DNA of 63,976 nt, filler included, from Octopus bimaculoides (taxonomy: Eukaryota), in assembly GCF_001194135.2 (NCBI RefSeq). It is 4 parts of 3 records of this genome, joined end to end, with 100 filler letters (N's around TTAATTAATTAA, not from the genome) between each part and the next. Parts side by side here need not be neighbours in the genome. Positions count along the whole stretch, not along the records: positions 1 to 27,952 come from NC_068983.1; 3 more parts are not named here. One strand, written 5' to 3'. Positions 93-27,996 of the stretch are shown here, piece after piece. How positions within the stretch are numbered: the stretch's first letter is position 1; every line of letters begins with the position of its first letter. The position numbers and the translations under genes were made by a program. The notes below the pieces were generated by a model. That model saw only the letters and a list, made by a program, of their open reading frames with translations. It was not told the DNA's origin and ran no database searches.

Positions 93-667
93 TGCGTTAG
101 GCCACCGATATGATCATTTTTTTTTTATTATACCCTTATTTTATAAATATGAAAACTTATTAAATTCTCTAGTCAGTATATTATTGTGCGGTACCGCATT
201 TACTCCATACTATTTCTGACATTAACCGCATAGCCGAAATAAGCTAGAATGTATACGCGAGAAATACGTGTATGTATTGGTATCTATGGATGTACTTATC
301 GGTGGGTACATGTATTTCTCGTTTATATATTTTTGGCATATATACTTCTACGGATGAATGCAGAACAAATTCTTGCAGAGCATAAAATCTTGAGGTATTG
401 AGTTATCCAAACATTTTTTGTATATTTTCTTGCTCATTCCCTCGCGTTCGACCTGTGGTTGAATATAGAAAACATATCTCAGAGTGGATTTTAGGTAATT
501 GACATCTACTTCTATCGTAGGCCGCTGGTCACATTCAGTAGCCCTTAAATATAATTGTTTTTAAAACATTTAATTTTTACCTTTATGGTCAGTGTTATGC
601 GCTAGGCCACTGATATAATCATTTTTTTATTATATCCTTATTTTATAAACAGACAGACAGACAGACA

Positions 668-6340: not shown

Positions 6341-7049
6341 TACGCTCGTTTTGTTTTTTTTCTCTTTTGTTTTGTTTTGTTTTGCCAATGCTATATGCAT
6401 AGACAGATACAAACACCTAGTCTGTCTGGTGTTCACTAAAAAAATCTGTAGAAGTATAACACTGAAACAAAACACTTCAAGCACAAAAGCAATTTATTAA
6501 TCTAGTAACATCGCTAATAACTTTCGGAATGAAGGTGTTTTGGTTTCTTTTCTCATTTTCGTAAAAACAGTTTGTTCTTTAATGATCATTTAAACCATTT
6601 AGGAAAAATTTTCCTAGAATAACGGAGTTAAATTGTTTCTTTTGTTTTGCTTTGTTTCTCAGTTTTATGCGTTCTTACAGTTACGATGACAGACGAAACC
6701 AGACGGGCTGAAAATGACGATGTAGGCAAAACGACAGTGAGTTGGGTAGGAGTAGGAACATTTCTGTAAACACACTATTATACACACACATATACACATA
6801 TACATCTGTATGTGTGTGTATGTGTGTGTGTGTGTGTGTGTGNNNNNNNNNNNNNNNNNNNNNNNNNNNNNNNNNNNNNNNNNNNNNNNNNNNNNNNNNN
6901 NNNNNNNNNNNNNNNNNNNNNNNNNNNNNNNNNNNNNGAGTGTGTGTGTGTGTGTGTGTATGTGTGTGTGTGTGTGATATCTAGGACGGTTAAAATTCGC
7001 GAGATCCACGGACGAGTTCTCTCCAGCGGTCTTTGTCCCTCATCATGTC

Positions 7050-12289: not shown

Positions 12290-13140
12290 GTTTATACATA
12301 TTTTTCTTACATTTATTTAGCTAAGTTTTAACATCATTTCCTTCGACATAGACACCTGATGCAGCAATACACCTATCCCAGCGTTCCTGCTACTTTGGGA
12401 ATCCAACCTAGAAGTTATTACCCATAAGCGAATCGAGGACCTTCGCCGATTCGCTCTGAATCTCAACAACGGTGCTAAAACGGCGACCTTTGAGCCTTTT
12501 CATCTTGGAGAAGAGATGGAAGTCTGCAGGTGCTAAATCTGGCGAATATAGTGGCGGCGGAAGTGATACCATGTTATTTTTTATGAGAAATTTACGAGTG
12601 AGGAGAGCTCAGTGAAAGGATGCATTGTCGTCGTGAAGAATCTAATTCTGCGCGCGCTCCATAGATGGTATTGCTTCCGCTGAATGTCCACCCTCAAACG
12701 CTTCAAAATTTCGCGGTAGAACTCTCGATTGGCGGTCTGGCCCTGGGGGACGAATTCTCAATGCACAATAGCACATTCCAGATCGCTCAATGTCTTCCAG
12801 GGACTTTCTTCCGCTTTTGAAGCGCCCGCACCACTCGAAGCATTGCGTATAACCCATTGCCTCGTCGCCGCCAGCTTGCTGAAGCATGCTCAATGTCTCT
12901 GTAGCGGACTTCCCAAGATTAATGCAAAATTTCACGTTGGCTCTTTGTTCCTGTCCATGACAAAATCGCAGGCTACAGCATCACAAAAACAAATTTCCCA
13001 ACTTACAAAGTAAACACAGCGATGTCACTCGACACACTACCTCATGAAGGTCACTGCTAGCACTAACTGTGCATGCAACCGTGTGCTGCCACCTGTTGGT
13101 GCGCTACAGAACTAGTCCGGGAACTTTTTGATACACCTCG
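12290..13140 (-). mobile_element. Mariner (DD34D-type) transposon, internally deleted and decayed
   Basis: 5' TIR cgaggtgtatcaaaaagttcccggactagt at 13111-13140 next to TA; MKFCINLGKSATETL...CFEWCGRFKSGR HTH region; HDDNA...YSPDLAPADFHLFSKMK and RWDRCIAA C-terminus. Confidence 0.88.
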
Positions 13141-14651: not shown

Positions 14652-14760
14652 NNNNNNNNNNNNNNNNNNNNNNNNNNNNNNNNNNNNNNNNNNNNNNNNN
14701 NNNNNNNNNNNNNNNNNNNNNNNNNNNNNNNNNNNNNNNNNNNNNNNNNNNNNNNNNNNN

Positions 14761-19190: not shown

Positions 19191-20518
19191 CAGGGTTAGG
19201 GTTAGGGTTACATTTGACAGAATAATCTGAATGTTAAAGGGTTAAACATTTATTATTTGGTGTCAGTGGAAGTGTGTCAGTGGAAGTGTGTCAGTGGAAG
19301 TGTGTCAGTGGAAGTGTGTCAGCGACCAGGTCACAGAATTTGTAGCAAAAATTTTTACACCAGTTAATAAATGTTTAAATGAAGCTAACAGTTTTGTATG
19401 TTTTTAAATGGCTAGCATATATTTTTCATGCTGCAATTGCTTTGGTTTCAGCACAAATCAAATCACTTGTTAGATAAGCACATCTCTGAAATACAAGGTT
19501 TTTTTTTCTTTTCTTTTTTTTTTTTGTTATTTTCCACCTTTAAAAAATATTTTTGAAAAATTTTATTATTAGGATTTATTGTTAGTCATTAATACTAGGT
19601 CCTCTGCAATAGTAGCTTGGTTTCAGTTTATTTTATTTGTTTGTTTTAAAGGGTGTAACCAAAAAGAGACAAAATTTAATATTTTAATATGTTTTCATAT
19701 GTGGATTTCTTTTGACTATTTTCAAAGCCAATATTCATCCAGAAGAGTGTACAGCAATATATTATTGCTACTTTTTTTTTTTTTTTTCTTTGCAATCAAC
19801 ACTGCTCATCCACTCCCAGCTCACTTAGAAGAGTAAAAAGAAAAACTCGACTCAGGTGTGAGTTGAACTCAAAACAGAGAATGACAAAATTAAATACTGT
19901 AGTAAATTTAGTCTAGCTCTCTACCATTACTGCCAAATGACTGCCCTTCTATTCTCAAATGGTAGTAGCTTTTTGATAGATTGTATTAGAAAGAACTTTA
20001 GTTTTTCTGTCCTTCTTTCCTTTTTTTTTTCTTTTGTAATCCAAATATAGTAAGTTCATACCTCTCTGAGGATGTTAATAAACAAGAAAAATAATACTTC
20101 GATTTCTAATTTTCACAGTTTATAAGCATTTTGTTACACTTGCCAATATTGTTACTGTTGACAAGTTGAAACAACTTTCAACCAGTCAAACAGGAAGTTC
20201 TATCATCATGGTTTAGTTGATAATTTATTCGTCTAAAATATTTCCAGTTTTTCTTTATGCATTTATTACAGCATAATGAACAAATTATTCTTCATTAGGA
20301 TGTAATAAATGTTTGGAATCCCTCTTTTTCCTTTCTTATTCCTTTTGTTTCCTCTTCTTTGAAAGTTTTTCTTTTTTTTTCTTTTTCAGTTTTTATTGTT
20401 TTTTGTTTCCTTTGAAGGAATTCCGACAATCCACCACCACTTTTGTCTCTAGTGGTCCCAGCAGAGAAAAAAAAGACATTAAACCAGTTGATCACTGCTA
20501 ACATAATTCTGTGGATAT

Positions 20519-20681
20519 CTAGCTATTGCAAGAACAACATCTGTTTTGGAAGCAAATAGCAGCTATGATGATAAGGATGAAGGCAACAGCCAACACAGTT
20601 CCAGTAGCAAACATTTCTCCCATTGAGAGGCCACTTTGACCAGGCGGAAGGACTTCGTCATCATCAAACATTGGAGTGTCG
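20519..20681 (-). CDS. Exon 4 of 4 (terminal coding exon): transmembrane helix and short Cys-rich tail
   Basis: Long polypyrimidine acceptor ...ttttttctctctAG; phase 2 start: DTPMFDDDEVLPPGQSGLSMGEMFATGTVLAVAFILIIIAAICFQNRCCSCNS-TAG. Hydrophobic stretch of about 20 aa; AATAAA on the minus strand at 20392-20397. Confidence 0.85.
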
Positions 20682-21224
20682 CTAGAGAGAAAAAAGAAAC
20701 AGAAAAAAAAAGCAGAAACAAGTTAATTATCATATAAACAACAAAAAATTAAGCAGTAAGACTGACAAATAAAATAAAATTTAACAATTTCATCATCATC
20801 ATTTAATGTCAGTTTTCCATGTTGACATCGGTTAGAGGATTTGACAGAATTCAGGAAGGCACAGAGCTGCAGTGAGTTCCAATGTCAGCTTTGGCGTGTT
20901 TTCTATGGCTGGATGCCCTTCCCAATGTCTTCTACCTTAATTTTTTTCTTTTTTTATACCCAATTGTTTTCTCTAACTTTTTAATAGTTTAAAGTGTGCA
21001 ACAAATGCTACAGCATACAAATTTTCGCCAATGATAAAGTATGTGTGAACATCATTCGTAAATACAAAAAGATTTGGAAAATGTTGACAGTCATCATCAT
21101 CATTTAATGTCCACTCTCCATGCTGGCAATGGTTAAATGGTTTGACTGGAGCTGATAAGCCAGAGATCTGTATCAGGTTCCAATCTGATTTGGCTGGTTA
21201 TGTTTTCATTATTCTATATTCTTT

Positions 21225-21612
21225 TATTTGTTCCAGTCATTTCACTGTGGCAATGCTGGAGCACCACCTTTAGTCAATCAGATCAACTCCAGGACTTATT
21301 CTTTGTAAGCCTAGTACTCATTCTCAGTCTCTTTTGCCAAACTGCTAAGTTACGGGGACATAAACACACCAACATCAGTTGTCAAACGATGGTGATGGTG
21401 GGGACAAACACAGCCACACAAGCATATGCATACATACATATATATATATACAACAGGCTTCTTTCAGTTCTGTCTACCAAATCCCCTCACAAGGCTTTGG
21501 TCAGCCTGAGGCTATAGTAGACGACACTTGCCCAAGGTGCCACGCAGTGTGACTGAACCCAGATTCATGTGGCTAGTAAGCAAGCTACTTACCACACAGC
21601 CACTCTTGTGCC
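21225..21612 (-). mobile_element. SINE family B copy (intronic)
   Basis: Homologous to 5880-6340; directly abuts the Tc1 left TIR. Confidence 0.8.
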
Positions 21613-21621
21613 TATAACGTA

Positions 21622-22863
21622 TAACGTCCTTTTTTTTATTTCAGATTCTTCAGTTTTTGGGAGACCCATGCTAACAGCGTTTGAATGAAAATAGCCCATC
21701 TAGACATTTTTTTTCAGAAAATGAAGGTTAGTGATAGATATTAAGCATACATTGAGTATATATTTGAAAGAAAACCATAATAATAATATAACATTTATTG
21801 ACATAATGAATTATTTAGCCACATTAGTGCCATTTCAACAGATAACTTCAAAAATCCTATTAGTCATGGAATCTGTCAATTTCTTAATAGTAGCAGATTG
21901 GACTGCTTCTGCTGCAGCTTTGATGGTCACCCATAAGACATCTTTCAACATAAATTGGTGTCCATCGGCATAAACATCTTGTTTAATGATGGACCAAAGA
22001 TTTTCGATAGGGTTGAGATTCAGAGATGCTAGCAGCCACACTATCAATCTTTCACCTTGTATGTCATAAGACTCTAGGAATGTTTGGATGGTCCCAGCAG
22101 AGTGGGAGGGAGTGATGACATGCATGAATATGAGATTCCTTAGAAGTGACAGCAGTATGTCATCTAGCCAAGGATCCAAGACCTCCTCCATGCGATTTCA
22201 GTAGGCGGCTGCAGTCACTTTAACCTCTTCAGGCACCCAAACTGGGCCAACAGGTCTGTCCTCGATGACACTGGCCCACAACATGACTCCTCAACTGTTG
22301 TTGATGTCGTAAACGTTGGTGACACTCATCTCCAAAATAGACCCAAACATTTGCCCAACCGTCAGATTCATCAAGGGTCAACCTGGTTTCATCAGTGAAC
22401 AGAACACACCTCAAGTCTAACATCATGTACTTTTGGGCTCGCTGAAGCCTCAAACTCATGTGAGGAGGCAGTTTCAGGGGTTCTCGCATGGAAGCCATGC
22501 TCTGATTTCTGGTGGTTTTCAGTACATGAGGAAGTCCAGAAGTAGTGAAAATAGCTTTGATTGTCTGTCCAAGTGTCCTATGTAACTTGTGGCCAATATT
22601 CCTTAAATCCCTAGCTATCACAGTCTTGGAGGTCCCACAATCGGATTGTTTCTTCCATGGTGCTCATGTGGCTACAAAATTCATTATGTCAATAAATGTT
22701 ACAATATTATTATGGTTTTCTGTTAAATATATACTCAATGTATGCTTAATATGTATCATTACCCTTCATTTCCTGGGAAAAAAATGTCAAGATGGGCTTC
22801 AAAAGCTACTAACGTGGTTCACTCAAAAGCTGAAGAACCTGAAATAAAAAAGAAGGGACGTTA
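21622..22863 (-). mobile_element. Tc1-family transposon with long (about 210 bp) TIRs, intronic in the M8/SEA gene
   Basis: Inverted repeats at about 21622-21832 and 22660-22863; VLFTDETRLTLD...DGW and LNPIENLWSIIK (DD34E-type) in frameshifted ORFs. Confidence 0.88.
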
Positions 22864-23110
22864 CACAGAATAATGAAAACATAACAATGGTGTTGCCATA
22901 GTGTATAAACCAGCTGAGAAAAGTTTTATCAAAATCGATTCACAGAAAACCGGAAAATCCTAAATTTCACTCCTAAGCTATTAATGTGATTTTAGGTGTA
23001 TATTGATGAACAGATAATCTAAATGTAGAAGATCATATCATAATTATTTGACTTTTGTGGAGTTGCCAGACTTCAGTTTAACTAGCTGAATATTAGAATA
23101 TTAAGATTAC

Positions 23111-23219
23111 CTGATGTACGTGGCTGTGTGTCGTCTGCCTGTGTGAGGTAGGACAATGGAGAAGTTACCTGCAAAAACAGCTTCATGAAGGACAGTATAA
23201 ACATATTTACTGTCAGGAC
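23111..23219 (-). CDS. Exon 3 of 4: C-terminal part of the SEA-like domain
   Basis: Acceptor ttttatttttttgtttctttcAG and donor ag|GTAATC; 109 nt, phase 1 to 2: (G)PDSKYVYTVLHEAVFAGNFSIVLPHTGRRHTATYI(S). Phases match both neighbouring exons. Confidence 0.85.
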
Positions 23220-23656
23220 CTGAAAGAAACAAAAAAATAAAACAATATTCTTTTGCAGTTCAGTGGACTAATTCAAAAGGTAATAGAGACTAATTCAAAG
23301 GTAATAGAATTAACAACTTTGCATGTTAAGTGAAGATAACGTCTGTTCAACAAATCAAACAAGTAACCTCACTACTACTGGCACCCCCAACTCTGTATAT
23401 ATTTCCTCTTTTGTTTCTTTCTTATTACTTTCTCTTTTCCCAGTTTCTCAACCTTCCACTTTTTCTATATACTTCCTTCTTGCTCTTTCTTGTTTCTTTT
23501 CTCATTCCATTTTTAGTCAGTTATGCCATGTAGGCTGTGCCTGATGACTGTGCCAAAATGGTAGGTGTGTTATAAAACACTATTTGGCATGTTCTCACCA
23601 CATGAAACTAGAAGCAGCACATAAAAACATGTATTGCGTTTACTAAATAAATATAT

Positions 23657-23657
<1 letters not shown>

Positions 23658-23709
<52 letters not shown>

Positions 23710-24222
23710 TTAACGTCTGTTTTCCATGCTGGCATAGGTTGGATGGCTTGACAGATCTGGAGAGCCAGCTGCTGCACCAGGTTCCAAACTGATCTACAGC
23801 TGGATGCCCTTCCTAATGTCAACCACTCCGAGAGTGTAGTCGGTACGTTTTACATGCCACTGGCAAAGGAGCTAGCCAGGCAGGCCTGAATTCGTTCACA
23901 TTTGGATAGTGCTTTTTATGAGCCACTGGCATGGGAGCCAGTCAGTGGGTACTGGCATTTGGATGGTGCTTTTTACGTGCAACCGGCATGAGAGCCATTC
24001 AGGTGGCCCTGGCATCAATCACGTTCAGATAATGCTTTTTAGGTACCACCGACAGGGAGCCAGTCGGGGGTGTTGGCACCAGCTACATTTGGATGGTGCT
24101 TTTTACGTGCCACTGGCACAGGAGCCAGTCAGGCAAACCTAGCATCGACCACATTCAGTCAAACCGTCCAATCCATGCCAGCATGGAAAACGGACGTTAA
24201 ACGATGATGGTGATGATGATGA
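23658..24222. mobile_element. Head-to-head pair of RTE-tail ((CAT)n-ended) non-autonomous repeats with internal tandem subrepeats
   Basis: 23706-23750 and 24150-24222 are inverted copies of catcat(c)gtttaacgtccgttttccatgctggcatgg; the interior has repeated ggtgctttttacgtgccac(t/c)ggca units. Confidence 0.75.
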
Positions 24223-24477
24223 AAATGCAAAATATTTTATTTTTTGTAGATTAGGTAGGCATAATTCACCCCTGCTTTTCAATCTCAGTATTCAAGCTAT
24301 GCATAATACTGTTGTAGTACACGTGCTGCGTACACTCCTACAACACCGCTTTATTTACATGTTCTGAAGGCAGAAGTAAATCTGCCTTCAACTCAGTCAT
24401 GCACCTGTTTTTCGCATATTTTTTGTGTTTTACTGCATAAAGATCACCAATTGCCTACCCTGAGTAATCACTGATGG

Positions 24478-24910
24478 CATCATCATCATCGTTTAACGTC
24501 CGCTTTCCATGCTAGCATGGGTTGGACGATTCGACTGAGGACTGGTGAAACCGGATGGCAAAACCAGGCTCCAATCTAATTTGGCAGAGTTTCTACAGCT
24601 GGATGCCCTTCCTAACGCCAACCACTCAGAGAGTGTAGTGGGTGCTTTTACGTGTCACCCGCACAAAAACGGCCACGCTCGAAATGGTGTCTTTTATGTG
24701 CCACCCGCACGGGCCAGTCCAGGGGCACTGGCAACGATCTCACTCGAAAATCCTACGGGAGCCAGTCAGGCGGTACTGGCAATGGCCACGCTCAAAATGG
24801 TGCATCTCATGTGCCACCCGCACAAGAGCCAGTCCAGGGGCACTGGCAACGATCTTACTTGGCTTGCCGGGTCTTCTCACGCACAGCACATTTCCAAAGG
24901 TCTCGGTCAG
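24478..24910 (-). mobile_element. RTE-tail non-autonomous repeat (shorter copies at 20790-20935, 21090-21200, 27243-27395)
   Basis: Same (CAT)n terminus and ggatgcccttcctaacgccaaccact motif as the RTE 3' UTR at 26440-26500. Confidence 0.75.
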
Positions 24911-24918
24911 TATGCCTC

Positions 24919-24959
<41 letters not shown>

Positions 24960-25162
24960 TTTACCTTTTCAATTTCTTTTTCAACTGAATCAACTAAGAT
25001 CCTCTTTCTATAAGATTTGTGAGAGTATGTTGTGAAGCCTTAAAAAGAATACAATAAAAGACAACTCGAATTGCTTAGGGAATTAATTCCTTGATGCTGA
25101 ATTAAAGATGCTGTAATATAAATAGATATTTTTACAGTTCTGTGTAAAAGAGCTTCACTTAC

Positions 25163-25384
25163 CACTCATGTTAGCATTTGGAGGGAGTAGTTGGAATGTA
25201 ACAACGATAGAACCACGGCGAACAAGAAAATTTACTAGCCGCCGTCTGTCGAGAGGCTGAATCTCTATTATCTTGTCAATAATTATCTGTGGTAAATTTG
25301 GAATCTGATCTGCTTTAAGAAGTTCATGGTAATCCATATCCTCAAATATGACATTAAATATATATGGTGAAGAATAGGATGTAG
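25163..25384 (-). CDS. Exon 2 of 4: N-terminal part of a SEA-like domain
   Basis: Acceptor ttgcctttatttgcAG and donor g|GTAAGT; 222 nt, phase 1 to 1: TSYSSPYIFNVIFEDMDYHELLKADQIPNLPQIIIDKIIEIQPLDRRRLVNFLVRRGSIVVTFQLLPPNANMS. Contains the SEA-type GSIVV motif; lies within track ORF 25155..25427. Confidence 0.85.
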
Positions 25385-25469
25385 CTGCAAATAAAGGCAA
25401 GAAATAACAAGACACTTGAGCATACAAGAGAGTTGGAGAAGAAGGATGGCATATACATGTTTACAGGAT

Positions 25470-26540
25470 CTTCAGGTGTGGAAGCAAGGCCTGGAATCTA
25501 AGGGCCTTAGAGTTAATTTAGCAAAAGCCAAAGTCTTTAGTAAGTAGAAAAACAGACAAATCCCAAGTCCCTTCAGGGTATTAGTAGAAACTCCATTTGT
25601 TGTACCAGTATAAGCTTTGGATACATAAGAGGTGTGTAGTGGTATCAAAGGAAGGTTAATGGAGAAAATCGTTTTTGTGTGTGGTAAATGTGCAGATACA
25701 ATAAGCACTAAAAATGCACAGACAATAGACTCCCTCAAATGTTTGGTGGGATCATTAGATGTAGTAGATAGCTTCAGTTACCTAGGAGACCAAGTTAGCA
25801 GTAGAGGAGGAAATTCTGAAAGTGTTGTTGCTAGAATAAGAATGGGCTGGGTAAAGTTCAGAGAGCTTCTACCTTTGTTGGCAACTAAAGGCCTCACCCT
25901 CAGAGTAAAAGGCAAGTTGTATGATGCCTGTGTATGTACAGCTATGTTACATGGCAATGGAACATGGGTTTTGACCATGGAGGACTTGCAAAAGCTTGAA
26001 AGGAGTGAAGGTAGCATGCTCCACTAGAGGGGTAATGTCAGTGTGCATGCACAACAGAAAGTAAATGATTTAAGAGGAAAACTGGGTATAAAAGGCACCA
26101 GATGTTGTGTGCAAGAGAGAAGAAAATTGTGCTGGTTTGATCATGTGATGCTTATGGATGAGGACAGCTATGTAAATAACTGCTGAGCTCTAATTGTGGA
26201 GGGAACCTGTGGAAGAAGTAGACCTAGAAATATGTGAGATGAAGTGGTGAGAAAGGATTTTCAGATGCTGGCCTCACTGAGGAAAGGAGTTGTTGCAATT
26301 TGCTGTACTTGAAAAATGCATCAAGCTAATTAAGATCTTCCATACACACAGGCTTGTTCATTCAGGTACCAGTGCCACAGAAAATGCACCCATACCAGTG
26401 CTGCATAAATGCACTCATGCTGGTGGCTTGTAAAAAGCACCCAGCACACACTGTTAAGTGGTTGGCATTAGGAAGGGCATCCAGCCATAGAAACCATGCC
26501 ACAACAGACAATTGCAGTCTGGCCAGACGACGACGTCATC
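25470..26540 (+). mobile_element. RTE-type LINE 3' part with PHD-like insertion, intronic in the M8/SEA gene
   Basis: CSGIKGRL..FVCGKC...LDVVDSFSYLGDQVSS...ARIRMGWVKFRELLPLL...KGKLYDACV..AMLHG..TW, then WFDHV..MDEDS...GRSRPR; the 3' UTR shares motifs with the (CAT)n-tailed repeats. Confidence 0.85.
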
Positions 26541-26934
26541 GTCGCCACCATCGCTGTTGTTGCTGTACTGAGATATTTATTTTCAAAAATCATATCTGAG
26601 AAGGCAGGACAGAAAACTGCACTCGTAATCTTTTTATTGCTTTAATAATATGTCTAAATCAATTGCATTGCATTTACAATACTTAACAAAAAGATAAACT
26701 AGTGAAAGTACTTCTATGTGATTGCTTGATCTACTAGAAATAACAACCAAATCTTCAATGACAAGTCATCACACTGTGTCTCCAAGCAAAATTCATAACT
26801 CTGCTGGCCTCCTCATTTCATGGTTGAATGGAAAGCAATAACAAAGATAACCAACAGCCAAAATATTTAATTCAAGATTCAAAATATCAAATTTCCAAAT
26901 TTGAGGAAGATAAAAACCCACAGTAACAACTCAC

Positions 26935-27058
26935 TGGGTGGTTCTGCGGAAAACTTTTTCGTCCATCTCGGTGGTTTAGTGCCCGTTTCACGGTTAGCTT
27001 TGGTACATAAGACACTTAGAATTTTTGGACAAACTACCACTCCTTTATAACCAGGAAG
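26935..27058 (-). CDS. Exon 1 of 4 visible (internal exon) of a putative peptidase-M8/leishmanolysin-like membrane protein
   Basis: Acceptor ttttctttctttacttttAG and donor a|GTGAGT; 124 nt, phase 0 to 1, open: LPGYKGVVVCPKILSVLCTKANRETGTKPPRWTKKFSAEPP. The PGYxGxxxCP...LC pattern resembles the C-terminal end of M8-family proteins (recalled, not searched). Confidence 0.75.
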
Positions 27059-27996
27059 CTAAAAGTAAAGAAAGAAAATATATTAAGTGAGATTTTAAAT
27101 AGAAATTCACTCATAATGACGTTTTTTTCTTAATAAAATCACAAATTTTGTTATCAGTGAACAATTACATTTACTTATTTTAGGATACAAACATATTTAT
27201 ATGCACATTTACACAGACATGCATACACATACATACATTCACATCATCATCATCATTTAATGTCTATGTTCTATGTTGGCATGTGTTGGATGGTTCAACA
27301 GGATCTGACAAGTCAGAGGACTGCTTTGGGCTCTAATGTCTGCTTTGGTATGGTTTCTAAAGCTGGATGCCCGTCCTGGTGCCAACCACTTTACAGAATA
27401 AAATTTGGCTGCTTCAGAGCTGGTTGAGAGAGTTTCTGAGCTGATAATTAGTACTGAAGGACAATTCACTGATAACAATAATCACTTATTGTTATTCTTT
27501 TATTGTTTTCAGTTACTGGACTGTGGCCATGCAAGATCTCTCCTCTGCCTTCAAAGGTTTTAATCCATCATTTCAACACAGTATTTATTCCAACCAGGTA
27601 CTTATTTTATCAAATCATTATTTTTAAATTGCTACCATTTTGGCACTAAGGGACACAACTCCACGCCAGGTTACATAAGTAAACATCAGACCTAAAAATA
27701 CACACACACACAAACACATATTTGATTGTGCATGTGAATGCGAATGTGTATATGCGTCTCTCTCTCTCTCTCTCTCTCTTAGAAATGGCAGTAATTGTCA
27801 AAAACGCATGAAACTGAAGCCCAAAACTACTCCAGCTAGCATCAATCCATTTCAGAAAGGTTACCTTTTTCAGAAATATTGAAGAAAAATGTAAGGCATG
27901 CAAGATAGAACAACTCTTCCTTGCCATGTTTGCTCTCTCTCTCTCTCTCTCTNNNNNNNNNNNNNNNNNNNNNNNNNNNNNNNNNNNNNNNNNNNN

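What the first reader, a model, noticed from the sequence alone, without database searches (positions are those of the whole stretch)
20519..27058. Hidden gene fragment: M8/leishmanolysin-like end fused to a SEA-like module, TM helix and Cys-rich tail
Seen: four minus-strand exons with canonical splice sites and matching phases (0-1, 1-1, 1-2, 2-stop) join into a stop-free 205-aa C-terminus. Established: M8 proteases end in a Cys-rich domain with a G-x-x-x-C-P...(L/V/F)C motif, and the forms I recall (Leishmania GP63, LMLN) follow it with a GPI signal or short anchor. Inference: here that motif is followed by a Pro/Thr linker, a SEA-like domain and a type I anchor, an architecture I do not recall being described. 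It would be a membrane-tethered, sheddable cephalopod surface metalloprotease.
Basis: partly seen in the sequence, partly recalled or inferred. Interest (0 to 1): 0.8.

Follow-up and report, generated by a model that had tools for sequence, protein, structure and literature searches.

The report
Octopus LMLN2/CIROP metalloprotease gene, 3' end

Summary
Four minus-strand exons (27058-26935, 25384-25163, 23219-23111, 20681-20519) have AG/GT sites and phases 0-1, 1-1, 1-2, 2-stop. They join into a 205-aa C-terminus.

That peptide is 97% identical, without gaps, to residues 494-698 of the RefSeq protein 'leishmanolysin-like peptidase 2 [Octopus sinensis]'. It is 62% identical end to end to the last 204 aa of a 707-aa protein from mRNA-like contigs. 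That protein carries Pfam Peptidase_M8 and HExxH. The M8 reading is therefore right.

The family (LMLN2, also called CIROP, ciliated left-right organizer metallopeptidase) is already described as an M8 protease with a C-terminal transmembrane domain. The architecture is not new.

The 'SEA-like' module is supported only by fold and motif. A confident model (pLDDT 90.7) shows a beta-alpha-beta-beta-alpha-beta domain next to the membrane, with G-S-I-V-V in the beta2-beta3 turn. No SEA sequence profile matches, and Foldseek finds no significant hit.

Self-cleavage and shedding remain inference. So does palmitoylation of the CFQNRCCSCNS tail, which is identical in all four cephalopod sequences. Interest is low to moderate.

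The parts
26935..27058 (-). Coding exon, phase 0 to 1 (peptide residues 1-41 plus the first base of codon 42). Residues 1-18 (27005-27058) are the last Cys pair of the M8 C-terminal domain (GYKGVVVCPKILSVLC). The rest is a poorly conserved Pro/Thr/Lys linker.
   Evidence: The alignment to 1LML reaches this motif. C503, P504 and C511 of P0008 are invariant in 18 family members.
25163..25384 (-). Coding exon, phase 1 to 1 (residues 42-116 in part). It holds the first half of the juxtamembrane alpha/beta module: beta1, alpha1, beta2 and beta3.
   Evidence: (10 synonymous to 1 non-synonymous change against L001).
25200..25214 (-). Codons for G99-S100-I-V-V. This is a SEA-type G|S[IV]VV motif lying in the predicted beta2-beta3 hairpin turn, and is the candidate self-cleavage site.
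   Evidence: position in the model; MUC1 chains in the PDB break at RPG|SVVV; coordinates. Cleavage itself is not tested.
23111..23219 (-). Coding exon, phase 1 to 2 (residues 116-152 in part). It holds alpha2 and the last strands of the module, and the N134 sequon (NFS).
20519..20681 (-). Last coding exon including the TAG stop (20519-20521). It holds the end of the module, an acidic stalk, the transmembrane helix and the cytoplasmic tail.
20549..20611 (-). Transmembrane helix, F176-F196 (FATGTVLAVAFILIIIAAICF).
   Evidence: The maximum Kyte-Doolittle 19-residue mean is 2.74, for residues 178-196. The AlphaFold2 helix spans 665-694 of P0008. This stretch is 81% identical to P0002.
20522..20548 (-). 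Nine-residue cytoplasmic tail QNRCCSCNS. Together with C195 it forms a cluster of four cysteines (195, 200, 201, 203).
   Evidence: 9/9 residues are identical to P0002. CFQNRCCSCN is identical in the window, P0008, P0002 and P0007. Palmitoylation is inferred, not tested.

Best explanation
The finding is the last four coding exons of the octopus orthologue of LMLN2/CIROP, a type I membrane-anchored zinc metalloprotease of family M8 (leishmanolysin). The catalytic exons lie upstream, beyond the edge of the piece.

**What the window encodes, in order:**
- the final disulfide-bonded hairpin of the M8 C-terminal domain
- a variable Pro/Thr-rich linker
- a roughly 105-aa beta-alpha-beta-beta-alpha-beta (ferredoxin-like, SEA-like) domain next to the membrane
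- a short acidic stalk
- one transmembrane helix
- a nine-residue Cys-rich cytoplasmic tail

**Shown here:** gene identity, exon structure, M8 membership of the full-length orthologues, the transmembrane anchor, the predicted fold of the module, and conservation of the tail.

**Inferred:**
- The octopus module keeps a canonical G|SIVV motif in the beta2-beta3 turn. It may therefore cleave itself during folding, as MUC1-type SEA domains do. That would leave the protease held non-covalently on its membrane stub and releasable. I put this at about 0.4.
- The CCxC tail is S-palmitoylated and helps to sort the enzyme in the membrane. I put this at about 0.6.
- By analogy with vertebrate Cirop, the enzyme acts at the surface of ciliated cells.
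For: - **Exons and peptide:**
- **Orthologue in a sister species:** 97% gapless identity to residues 494-698 of RefSeq 'leishmanolysin-like peptidase 2 [Octopus sinensis]'. tblastn finds only these four exons.
- **Spliced mRNA evidence:** P0002 is a 707-aa uninterrupted ORF on 23 contigs of 2.5-2.9 kb, which I read as spliced mRNA. It aligns end to end with the peptide (E 1e-92) and has Peptidase_M8 at 140.9 bits against a cut-off of 21. It carries HELLHAMGF, and P0008 carries HELFHAVGF. H234, E235, H238, H315 and M326 of P0008 are invariant in 18 family members.
- **Link to leishmanolysin:** 1LML matches the family profile at E 1.7e-34 by sequence and at E 9.5e-21 by Foldseek.
- **Subfamily:** the closest named relatives are CIROP-like or LMLN2 proteins of hemichordate, amphioxus, tunicate, gastropod, scorpion and mustelids.
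- **Module:** the domain model has pLDDT 90.7 and pTM 0.83, with G|S in the beta2-beta3 turn.
- **Purifying selection:**
- **Tail:** 9/9 identical across cephalopods, against 21% identity in the linker.
- **Literature:** Cirop is described as SP, propeptide, catalytic domain and C-terminal TMD, and localises to cilia (bioRxiv 10.1101/2024.10.13.618030).
Against: - The window contains no catalytic residue. An active M8 domain upstream in this very genome is inferred from orthologues.
- No SEA profile matches the module. Pfam gave nothing for the peptide or for 17 family members. A profile search of PDB sequences gave nothing. hhalign against MUC1 SEA gave probability 0.6%.
- Foldseek gives no hit at E <= 0.001. 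The best hits are SorCS2, EpCAM/Trop2 and IA-2 ectodomains, not canonical SEA domains.
- The G-S motif is absent from many orthologues. The two non-octopus cephalopod orthologues have G-T and a one-residue deletion.
- Nothing here tests cleavage, palmitoylation, expression or localisation in octopus.
Confidence: 0.9

Rival explanations
1. Same gene, but the juxtamembrane module is only a rigid spacer or dimerisation domain of the ferredoxin-like kind found next to the membrane in EpCAM/Trop2 and SorCS2. On this reading it does not cleave itself, G-S-I-V-V is incidental, and the protease stays covalently anchored, as vertebrate CIROP is drawn.
For: - The best Foldseek matches are SorCS2 (E 0.011, TMq 0.65) and EpCAM (E 0.028, TMq 0.63), not canonical SEA domains.
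- There is no SEA profile match.
- The G-S pair is missing in Patella, amphioxus, tunicates, mustelids and P0009, and is changed to G-T with a deletion in P0002 and P0007.
- The literature scheme of Cirop shows no cleavage domain.
Against: - The full five-residue motif G-S-[IV]-[IV]-[VF] sits exactly in the beta2-beta3 turn, where SEA domains cleave.
- The motif recurs in Octopus, Owenia and Glandiceps.
- From my own knowledge, EpCAM's C-terminal domain and the IA-2 ectodomain have themselves been classed as divergent SEA-like folds (Pei and Grishin 2017, not readable here).
Confidence: 0.45
2. The four exons are a truncated or duplicated pseudogene fragment of LMLN2 with no functional catalytic part upstream.
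For: The piece ends 894 bp upstream of the first exon, and nothing matching P0008 residues 1-493 lies inside it.
Against: - All splice sites and the reading frame are intact.
- Exon 2 shows 10 synonymous changes to 1 conservative change against an orthologous contig, while the introns have diverged to about 72% identity.
- There are only 6 differences in 205 aa from the O. sinensis protein.
- The introns here are 1.5-2.4 kb, so an upstream exon more than 0.9 kb away is expected.
Confidence: 0.04
3. One reading: the C-terminus belongs to a protein that is not M8, such as an ADAM, an EGF protein or a mucin.
For: The window peptide alone gives no Pfam or PDB sequence hit.
Against: The full-length proteins ending in this same C-terminus are M8.
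Confidence: 0.01

Closest known systems
Leishmanolysin-like peptidase 2 (LMLN2) of Octopus sinensis, RefSeq model (P0008, 698 aa)
   Same: Orthologue. Residues 494-698 are 199/205 identical and gapless to the window peptide, with the same start of the exon block and the same stop.
   Different: There are six substitutions, including GSIIV for GSIVV. The window comes from another, closely related octopus genome. Species not determined.
Vertebrate CIROP (ciliated left-right organizer metallopeptidase, formerly LMLN2)
   Same: - Same M8 subfamily by best named hits.
- Same order of parts: signal peptide, M8 domain, a segment of about 105 aa, one transmembrane helix and a cytoplasmic tail.
   Different: - The mammalian juxtamembrane segment is not significantly similar in sequence to the invertebrate module (hhalign probability 0.7%), and it has no G-S motif.
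- Vertebrate and most invertebrate tails are longer and share a [VI]-[AGS]-P motif that cephalopods lack.
- The left-right patterning role is known only for vertebrates.
Leishmania GP63 / leishmanolysin (PDB 1LML), type member of family M8
   Same: The catalytic and C-terminal domains are homologous (E 1.7e-34 by profile; Foldseek E 9.5e-21). This includes the terminal G..CP....C motif encoded at 27005-27058.
   Different: The 1LML chain's match ends at that motif. From my own knowledge GP63 is GPI-anchored. It has no juxtamembrane alpha/beta module, transmembrane helix or Cys-rich tail.
SEA domains that cleave themselves (MUC1; from my own knowledge also MUC3/12/17 and dystroglycan, which cleave at G|SIVV)
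   Same: - Position next to the membrane in a type I protein.
- Predicted beta-alpha-beta-beta-alpha-beta fold.
- G|S[IV]VV in the beta2-beta3 turn.
   Different: No detectable sequence-profile similarity. No canonical SEA structure appears among the top 50 Foldseek hits. Cleavage is untested.
Membrane-proximal domains of SorCS2 (6FFY/6FG9), EpCAM/Trop2 (4MZV, 7PEE) and IA-2 (3N01)
   Same: These are the best structural matches to the module model: TMq 0.63-0.65 for SorCS2 and EpCAM, and TMt 0.65 for IA-2. From my own knowledge, all lie next to the membrane in type I proteins.
   Different: E-values are only 0.01-0.45 and identity is 11-15%. None of them is attached to a protease.

Membership tests
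Peptidase family M8 (leishmanolysin; Pfam PF01457) | Profile match above Pfam's gathering score | tested here: met
   The full-length orthologue P0002 scores 140.9 bits against a cut-off of 21. PF01457 is precomputed for P0008 and 86 other hits. The window peptide alone gives no hit, because it holds only the last 18 residues of the domain.
Peptidase family M8 (leishmanolysin; Pfam PF01457) | HExxH zinc site, third histidine and Met-turn in the gene of this window | not testable with these tools
   The catalytic exons lie outside the piece. In the orthologues, H234, E235, H238, H315 and M326 (P0008 numbering) are invariant across 18 sequences.
Peptidase family M8 (leishmanolysin; Pfam PF01457) | C-terminal Cys-rich domain ending in G-x(n)-C-P-x(4-5)-[LV]-C | tested here: met
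   The family profile aligns to 1LML up to 'GGGYITCPPYVEVC'. The window encodes GYKGVVVCPKILSVLC. C503, P504 and C511 are invariant.
LMLN2 / CIROP subfamily | Closest relatives are LMLN2/CIROP proteins | tested here: met
   The peptide is 97% identical to O. sinensis LMLN2. The next named hits are CIROP-like or LMLN2 proteins from six phyla. No tree was built.
LMLN2 / CIROP subfamily | Single C-terminal transmembrane helix (type I) | tested here: met
   Hydropathy of 2.74 over residues 178-196. AlphaFold2 helix at 665-694 of P0008. A transmembrane segment aligns in 17 of 18 family members. The literature describes a C-terminal TMD.
LMLN2 / CIROP subfamily | Conserved cytoplasmic [VI]-[AGS]-P motif about 10 residues after the helix | tested here: not met
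   The motif is present in 11 of 14 non-cephalopod sequences of alignment A2. It is absent in all cephalopods, whose protein ends CFQNRCCSCN[SG]. This is a feature I noticed here, not a published criterion.
LMLN2 / CIROP subfamily | Ciliary localisation and a role in left-right patterning | not testable with these tools
   Known for Xenopus, fish, mouse and human only.
SEA domain (Pfam PF01390) | Sequence-profile match to SEA | tested here: not met
   No Pfam hit at E <= 10 for the peptide or for any of 17 module sequences. The profile against PDB sequences found no SEA protein. hhalign against MUC1 SEA gave probability 0.6%.
SEA domain (Pfam PF01390) | Ferredoxin-like beta-alpha-beta-beta-alpha-beta fold | tested here: met
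   The domain model has pLDDT 90.7. Strands lie at 7-12, 49-54, 60-65 and 94-96 (plus 103-105 and 108-110). Helices lie at 18-23, 27-41 and 77-89. This is a prediction, not a solved structure.
SEA domain (Pfam PF01390) | Significant structural match to a solved SEA domain | tested here: inconclusive
   No Foldseek hit reaches E <= 0.001. The best hits are SorCS2, EpCAM/Trop2 and IA-2. MUC1 SEA is held as two half-chains in the PDB, which hampers the search. No direct superposition was possible.
SEA domain (Pfam PF01390) | G|S[VI]VV motif in the beta2-beta3 hairpin | tested here: met
   RRG-SIVV has G99|S100 (25209-25214) in the predicted turn. The MUC1 chains break at RPG|SVVV.
SEA domain (Pfam PF01390) | Autoproteolysis with the two chains staying associated | not testable with these tools
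   This needs expression and protein chemistry.

The most novel reading that the evidence does not exclude
LMLN2/CIROP proteases may ancestrally sit on a self-cleaving SEA-type juxtamembrane domain. A G|S-[IV]-[IV]-[VF] motif is kept in octopus, the annelid Owenia and the hemichordate Glandiceps. A weaker form (GSVKV) is present in the sea urchin Lytechinus. The motif is lost in chordates. If so, the catalytic ectodomain would be held non-covalently and could be released by force or flow, which would bear on how the vertebrate enzyme takes part in flow sensing. Cephalopods would in addition have replaced the family's [VI]xP cytoplasmic motif with a short palmitoylatable CCxC tail. Neither point is described in the papers I could search.
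Probability: 0.3. Interest if true: 0.55.

Novelty: already known. Interest (0 to 1): 0.28.

Why it matters
As a gene call it matters little. The orthologue is already annotated in Octopus sinensis, and the family has a characterised vertebrate member.

Two small points may interest people who work on CIROP or on SEA domains:
- The segment between the M8 domain and the membrane is drawn as blank in the CIROP scheme I could read. It is predicted with high confidence to be a folded SEA-like domain, and several invertebrate orthologues carry the canonical self-cleavage motif.
- Cephalopods lack the cytoplasmic [VI]xP motif shared by most other orthologues. They end instead in an invariant Cys cluster.

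Both points are cheap to test at the bench.

Tried and rejected
- **Pfam and PDB sequence searches with the 205-aa peptide** gave nothing.
- **Word-index protein search with the peptide** returned only an ORF call of exon 2 from a short octopus contig. It missed the 97% identical RefSeq protein, which surfaced only when P0002 was used as the query. I treat this as a tool limitation.
I did not try to get round this. I used the single-exon window piece and fragments of proteins already on record, both of which the tools accepted.
- **An upstream exon in 27059-27952:** I saw none, only SINE-like and simple repeats.
- **SEA homology by profile** against PDB sequences, by Pfam on 17 members and by hhalign against MUC1: all negative.
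- **Homology of the mammalian juxtamembrane segment** to the invertebrate module by hhalign was not significant. I claim only equivalence of position for mammals.
- **Literature** linking leishmanolysin to SEA domains or to cephalopods: nothing relevant. The primary CIROP paper and the Pei and Grishin SEA paper are not held.


Full report
**Observation.** I read 20400-27200 on the minus strand and extracted the four proposed exons by script. They lie at 27058-26935, 25384-25163, 23219-23111 and 20681-20519. Each follows a long pyrimidine tract and AG. The first three are followed by GTGAGT, GTAAGT and GTAATC. The joined 618 nt give 205 codons and TAG:

LPGYKGVVVCPKILSVLCTKANRETGTKPPRWTKKFSAEPPTTSYSSPYIFNVIFEDMDYHELLKADQIPNLPQIIIDKIIEIQPLDRRRLVNFLVRRGSIVVTFQLLPPNANMSGPDSKYVYTVLHEAVFAGNFSIVLPHTGRRHTATYISDTPMFDDDEVLPPGQSGLSMGEMFATGTVLAVAFILIIIAAICFQNRCCSCNS

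The 894 bases upstream of the first exon (27059-27952) show only SINE-like and simple repeats and no further exon.

**First searches.** Pfam and PDB sequence searches with the peptide gave nothing. The word-index protein search returned only P0001, a prokaryote-style ORF call of exon 2 on a 1230-bp octopus contig, L001. That contig is still useful. Within exon 2 it differs from the window at 11 of 222 bases: 10 synonymous and one Val/Ile. The 100 bases upstream and 200 bases downstream are only 72-73% identical and have indels. Exon 2 is therefore under purifying selection.

- It found P0002 (E 2e-15). This is a 707-aa protein on 23 Logan contigs of 2.5-2.9 kb.
- An uninterrupted 2.1-kb ORF means spliced mRNA, because the octopus gene has introns of 1.5-2.4 kb in the corresponding region.
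- P0002 has Pfam Peptidase_M8 (E 7e-41, 140.9 bits against a cut-off of 21) and the zinc motif HELLHAMGF.
- Its last 204 residues align end to end with the window peptide: 62% identity, E 1e-92, one 1-aa gap, and none at the exon junctions.
- Searching with P0002 then returned P0008, the RefSeq protein 'leishmanolysin-like peptidase 2 [Octopus sinensis]', 698 aa.
- P0008 residues 494-698 are 199/205 identical to the window peptide, gapless, with the same first and last residue.
- tblastn of P0008 against the piece finds exactly the four exons and nothing of residues 1-493.

The window therefore holds the 3' end of the LMLN2 orthologue of a closely related octopus. The next best named hits are 'ciliated left-right organizer metallopeptidase-like' or LMLN2 proteins of Glandiceps, Branchiostoma, Clavelina, Babylonia, Centruroides, mustelids, Patiria and others.

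**M8 membership.** I aligned 18 family members (A2). The invariant columns include H234, E235, H238, H315 and M326 of P0008 (the zinc ligands, the catalytic Glu and the Met-turn) and many cysteines, among them C503, P504 and C511. A profile of A2 hits leishmanolysin 1LML at E 1.7e-34. The second aligned stretch runs to GP63 'GGGYITCPPYVEVC' opposite the family's 'G..vvqCPsseilC'. An AlphaFold2 model of P0008 (mean pLDDT 71) matches 1LML at Foldseek E 9.5e-21. The catalytic residues of this particular genome lie outside the piece and could not be checked.

**Family architecture.** In A2, the M8 domain is followed by a variable linker, a segment of about 105 aa, a stalk, one hydrophobic helix and a cytoplasmic tail. 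This holds in cephalopods, Owenia, Patella, starfish, sea urchin, hemichordate, amphioxus, tunicates, scorpion and a mustelid. A preprint describes Cirop as signal peptide, propeptide, catalytic domain and C-terminal TMD, localised to cilia of left-right organizer cells (10.1101/2024.10.13.618030; see also PMC9816872). For mammals I claim only equivalence of position for the 105-aa segment. hhalign of the Mustela segment against the invertebrate profile is not significant (probability 0.7%).

**The 'SEA-like' module.**

Sequence tests are negative:
- No Pfam SEA hit for the peptide.
- No Pfam SEA hit for any of 17 module sequences.
- No SEA protein in a profile search of PDB sequences.
- hhalign against the MUC1 SEA domain gives probability 0.6%, aligning only the stretch around RPGSVVV.

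Structure prediction is positive for the fold:
- The module modelled alone with 16 aligned sequences has pLDDT 90.7 and pTM 0.83.
- Its topology is beta1 (7-12), helices (18-23, 27-41), beta2 (49-54), beta3 (60-65), helix (77-89), beta4 (94-96) and a terminal hairpin.
- G-S falls in the beta2-beta3 turn. That is where MUC1 is cut; the PDB chains of MUC1 end at RPG and begin at SVVV.

Foldseek against the PDB finds nothing at E <= 0.001. The best matches are SorCS2 (E 0.011, TMq 0.65), EpCAM (E 0.028, TMq 0.63), Trop2 and the IA-2 ectodomain (TMt 0.65). No canonical SEA domain appears in the top 50. From my own knowledge, the IA-2 ectodomain and the EpCAM C-terminal domain have been called SEA-like or divergent SEA folds (Pei and Grishin 2017, cited but not readable). 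Also from my own knowledge, G|SIVV is the cleavage site of MUC3/12/17 and dystroglycan.

My reading is this. The module is a ferredoxin-like fold of the SEA kind next to the membrane. Homology to Pfam SEA is not shown. The motif makes self-cleavage plausible in octopus, at about 0.4. The motif G-S-[IV]-[IV]-[VF] also occurs in Owenia (GSIIF) and Glandiceps (GSIIV), and more loosely in Lytechinus (GSVKV). It is absent from Patella, amphioxus, tunicates and mustelids. The two non-octopus cephalopod orthologues have RRGT-IVSF, with a one-residue deletion.

**Anchor and tail.** The helix FATGTVLAVAFILIIIAAICF has a maximum 19-residue hydropathy of 2.74 and is a helix in the model. I compared the window peptide with P0002 region by region:

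| Region | Residues | Identity to P0002 |
|---|---|---|
| End of M8 domain | 1-24 | 75% |
| Linker | 25-48 | 21% |
| Module | 49-157 | 62% |
| Stalk | 158-175 | 56% |
| Transmembrane helix | 176-196 | 81% |
| Cytoplasmic tail | 197-205 | 9/9 |

The invariant CFQNRCCSCN points to a constrained function. Juxtamembrane S-palmitoylation is the usual one, but this is inference. Most non-cephalopod orthologues instead carry a longer tail with a conserved [VI]-[AGS]-P about ten residues after the helix. From my own knowledge this resembles VxP ciliary targeting motifs, which fits Cirop's ciliary localisation. Cephalopods lack it.

**Verdict.** The M8 assignment, the anchor and the tail are right. 'SEA-like' is right for fold and motif but not demonstrated as family membership. 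The claim of an undescribed architecture is wrong, because this is LMLN2/CIROP, annotated in the sister species. Novelty: already known. Residual interest lies in the possibly self-cleaving juxtamembrane domain and in the cephalopod-specific tail.

Noticed in passing
window 21835-22621 (-), inside the intron between exons 23111-23219 and 20519-20681: Two adjacent ORFs (130 and 118 aa) look like a decayed Tc1/mariner-type transposase. The second gives a weak DDE_3 hit (E 0.0013, below Pfam's cut-off). By eye, similar A/T-rich stretches flank it at about 22700-22830 and 21690-21810. I did not test them as terminal repeats.
   Followed up: partly
window 12642-12935 (-): A 97-aa ORF matches the HTH_48 domain of Mos1-type mariner transposases (E 1.5e-7, above the cut-off). 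This is another transposon remnant about 8 kb downstream of the gene.
   Followed up: partly
window 20901-20918, 23792-23809, 24591-24608, 27355-27372 (-) and 26475-26492 (+): Five copies of a SINE-like repeat core (GGGCATCCAGCYGTAGAA, none expected by chance) lie in the introns and just upstream of the first exon. In one search, (GAT)n runs lie close by. One of them is a perfect 17.7-copy ATC array at 23657-23709.
   Followed up: partly
window 25632-26027 (+), in the intron between exons 26935-27058 and 25163-25384: A 131-aa ORF on the opposite strand has no Pfam hit. Part of this region is also present in the orthologous contig L001. It may be a retroelement remnant. Not resolved.
   Followed up: partly
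window 6843-6937 and 14652-14760: Runs of N (assembly gaps) are flanked by dinucleotide repeats (TG/GT and AT/TA). This points to a short-read scaffold.
   Followed up: no
window 19191-19210 and 19260-19322: About 1.2 kb downstream of the stop codon there are three telomere-like CCCTAA units (minus strand) and a perfect 14-base tandem repeat of 4.5 copies. No function is suggested.
   Followed up: no
alignment A2, columns about 1053-1062 (cytoplasmic tails of P0010-P0026): Most non-cephalopod LMLN2/CIROP orthologues share a [VI]-[AGS]-P motif about 10 residues after the transmembrane helix. Cephalopod proteins stop before it with CFQNRCCSCN[SG]. From memory it resembles VxP ciliary targeting signals. 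Not tested.
   Followed up: partly
P0002 and P0007 (mRNA-like contigs L002-L007, runs SRR292714xx): Two full-length orthologues are 86% identical to each other and 67% identical to the octopus protein. I infer they come from other cephalopods, but the species was not determined. They have RRGT-IVSF instead of RRGSIVVTF at the candidate cleavage turn.
   Followed up: partly
tool behaviour: The word-index protein search missed the 97% identical RefSeq protein P0008 when queried with the window peptide or with the module alignment. It found P0008 when queried with P0002. Negative results from that tool should not be read as absence.
   Followed up: no
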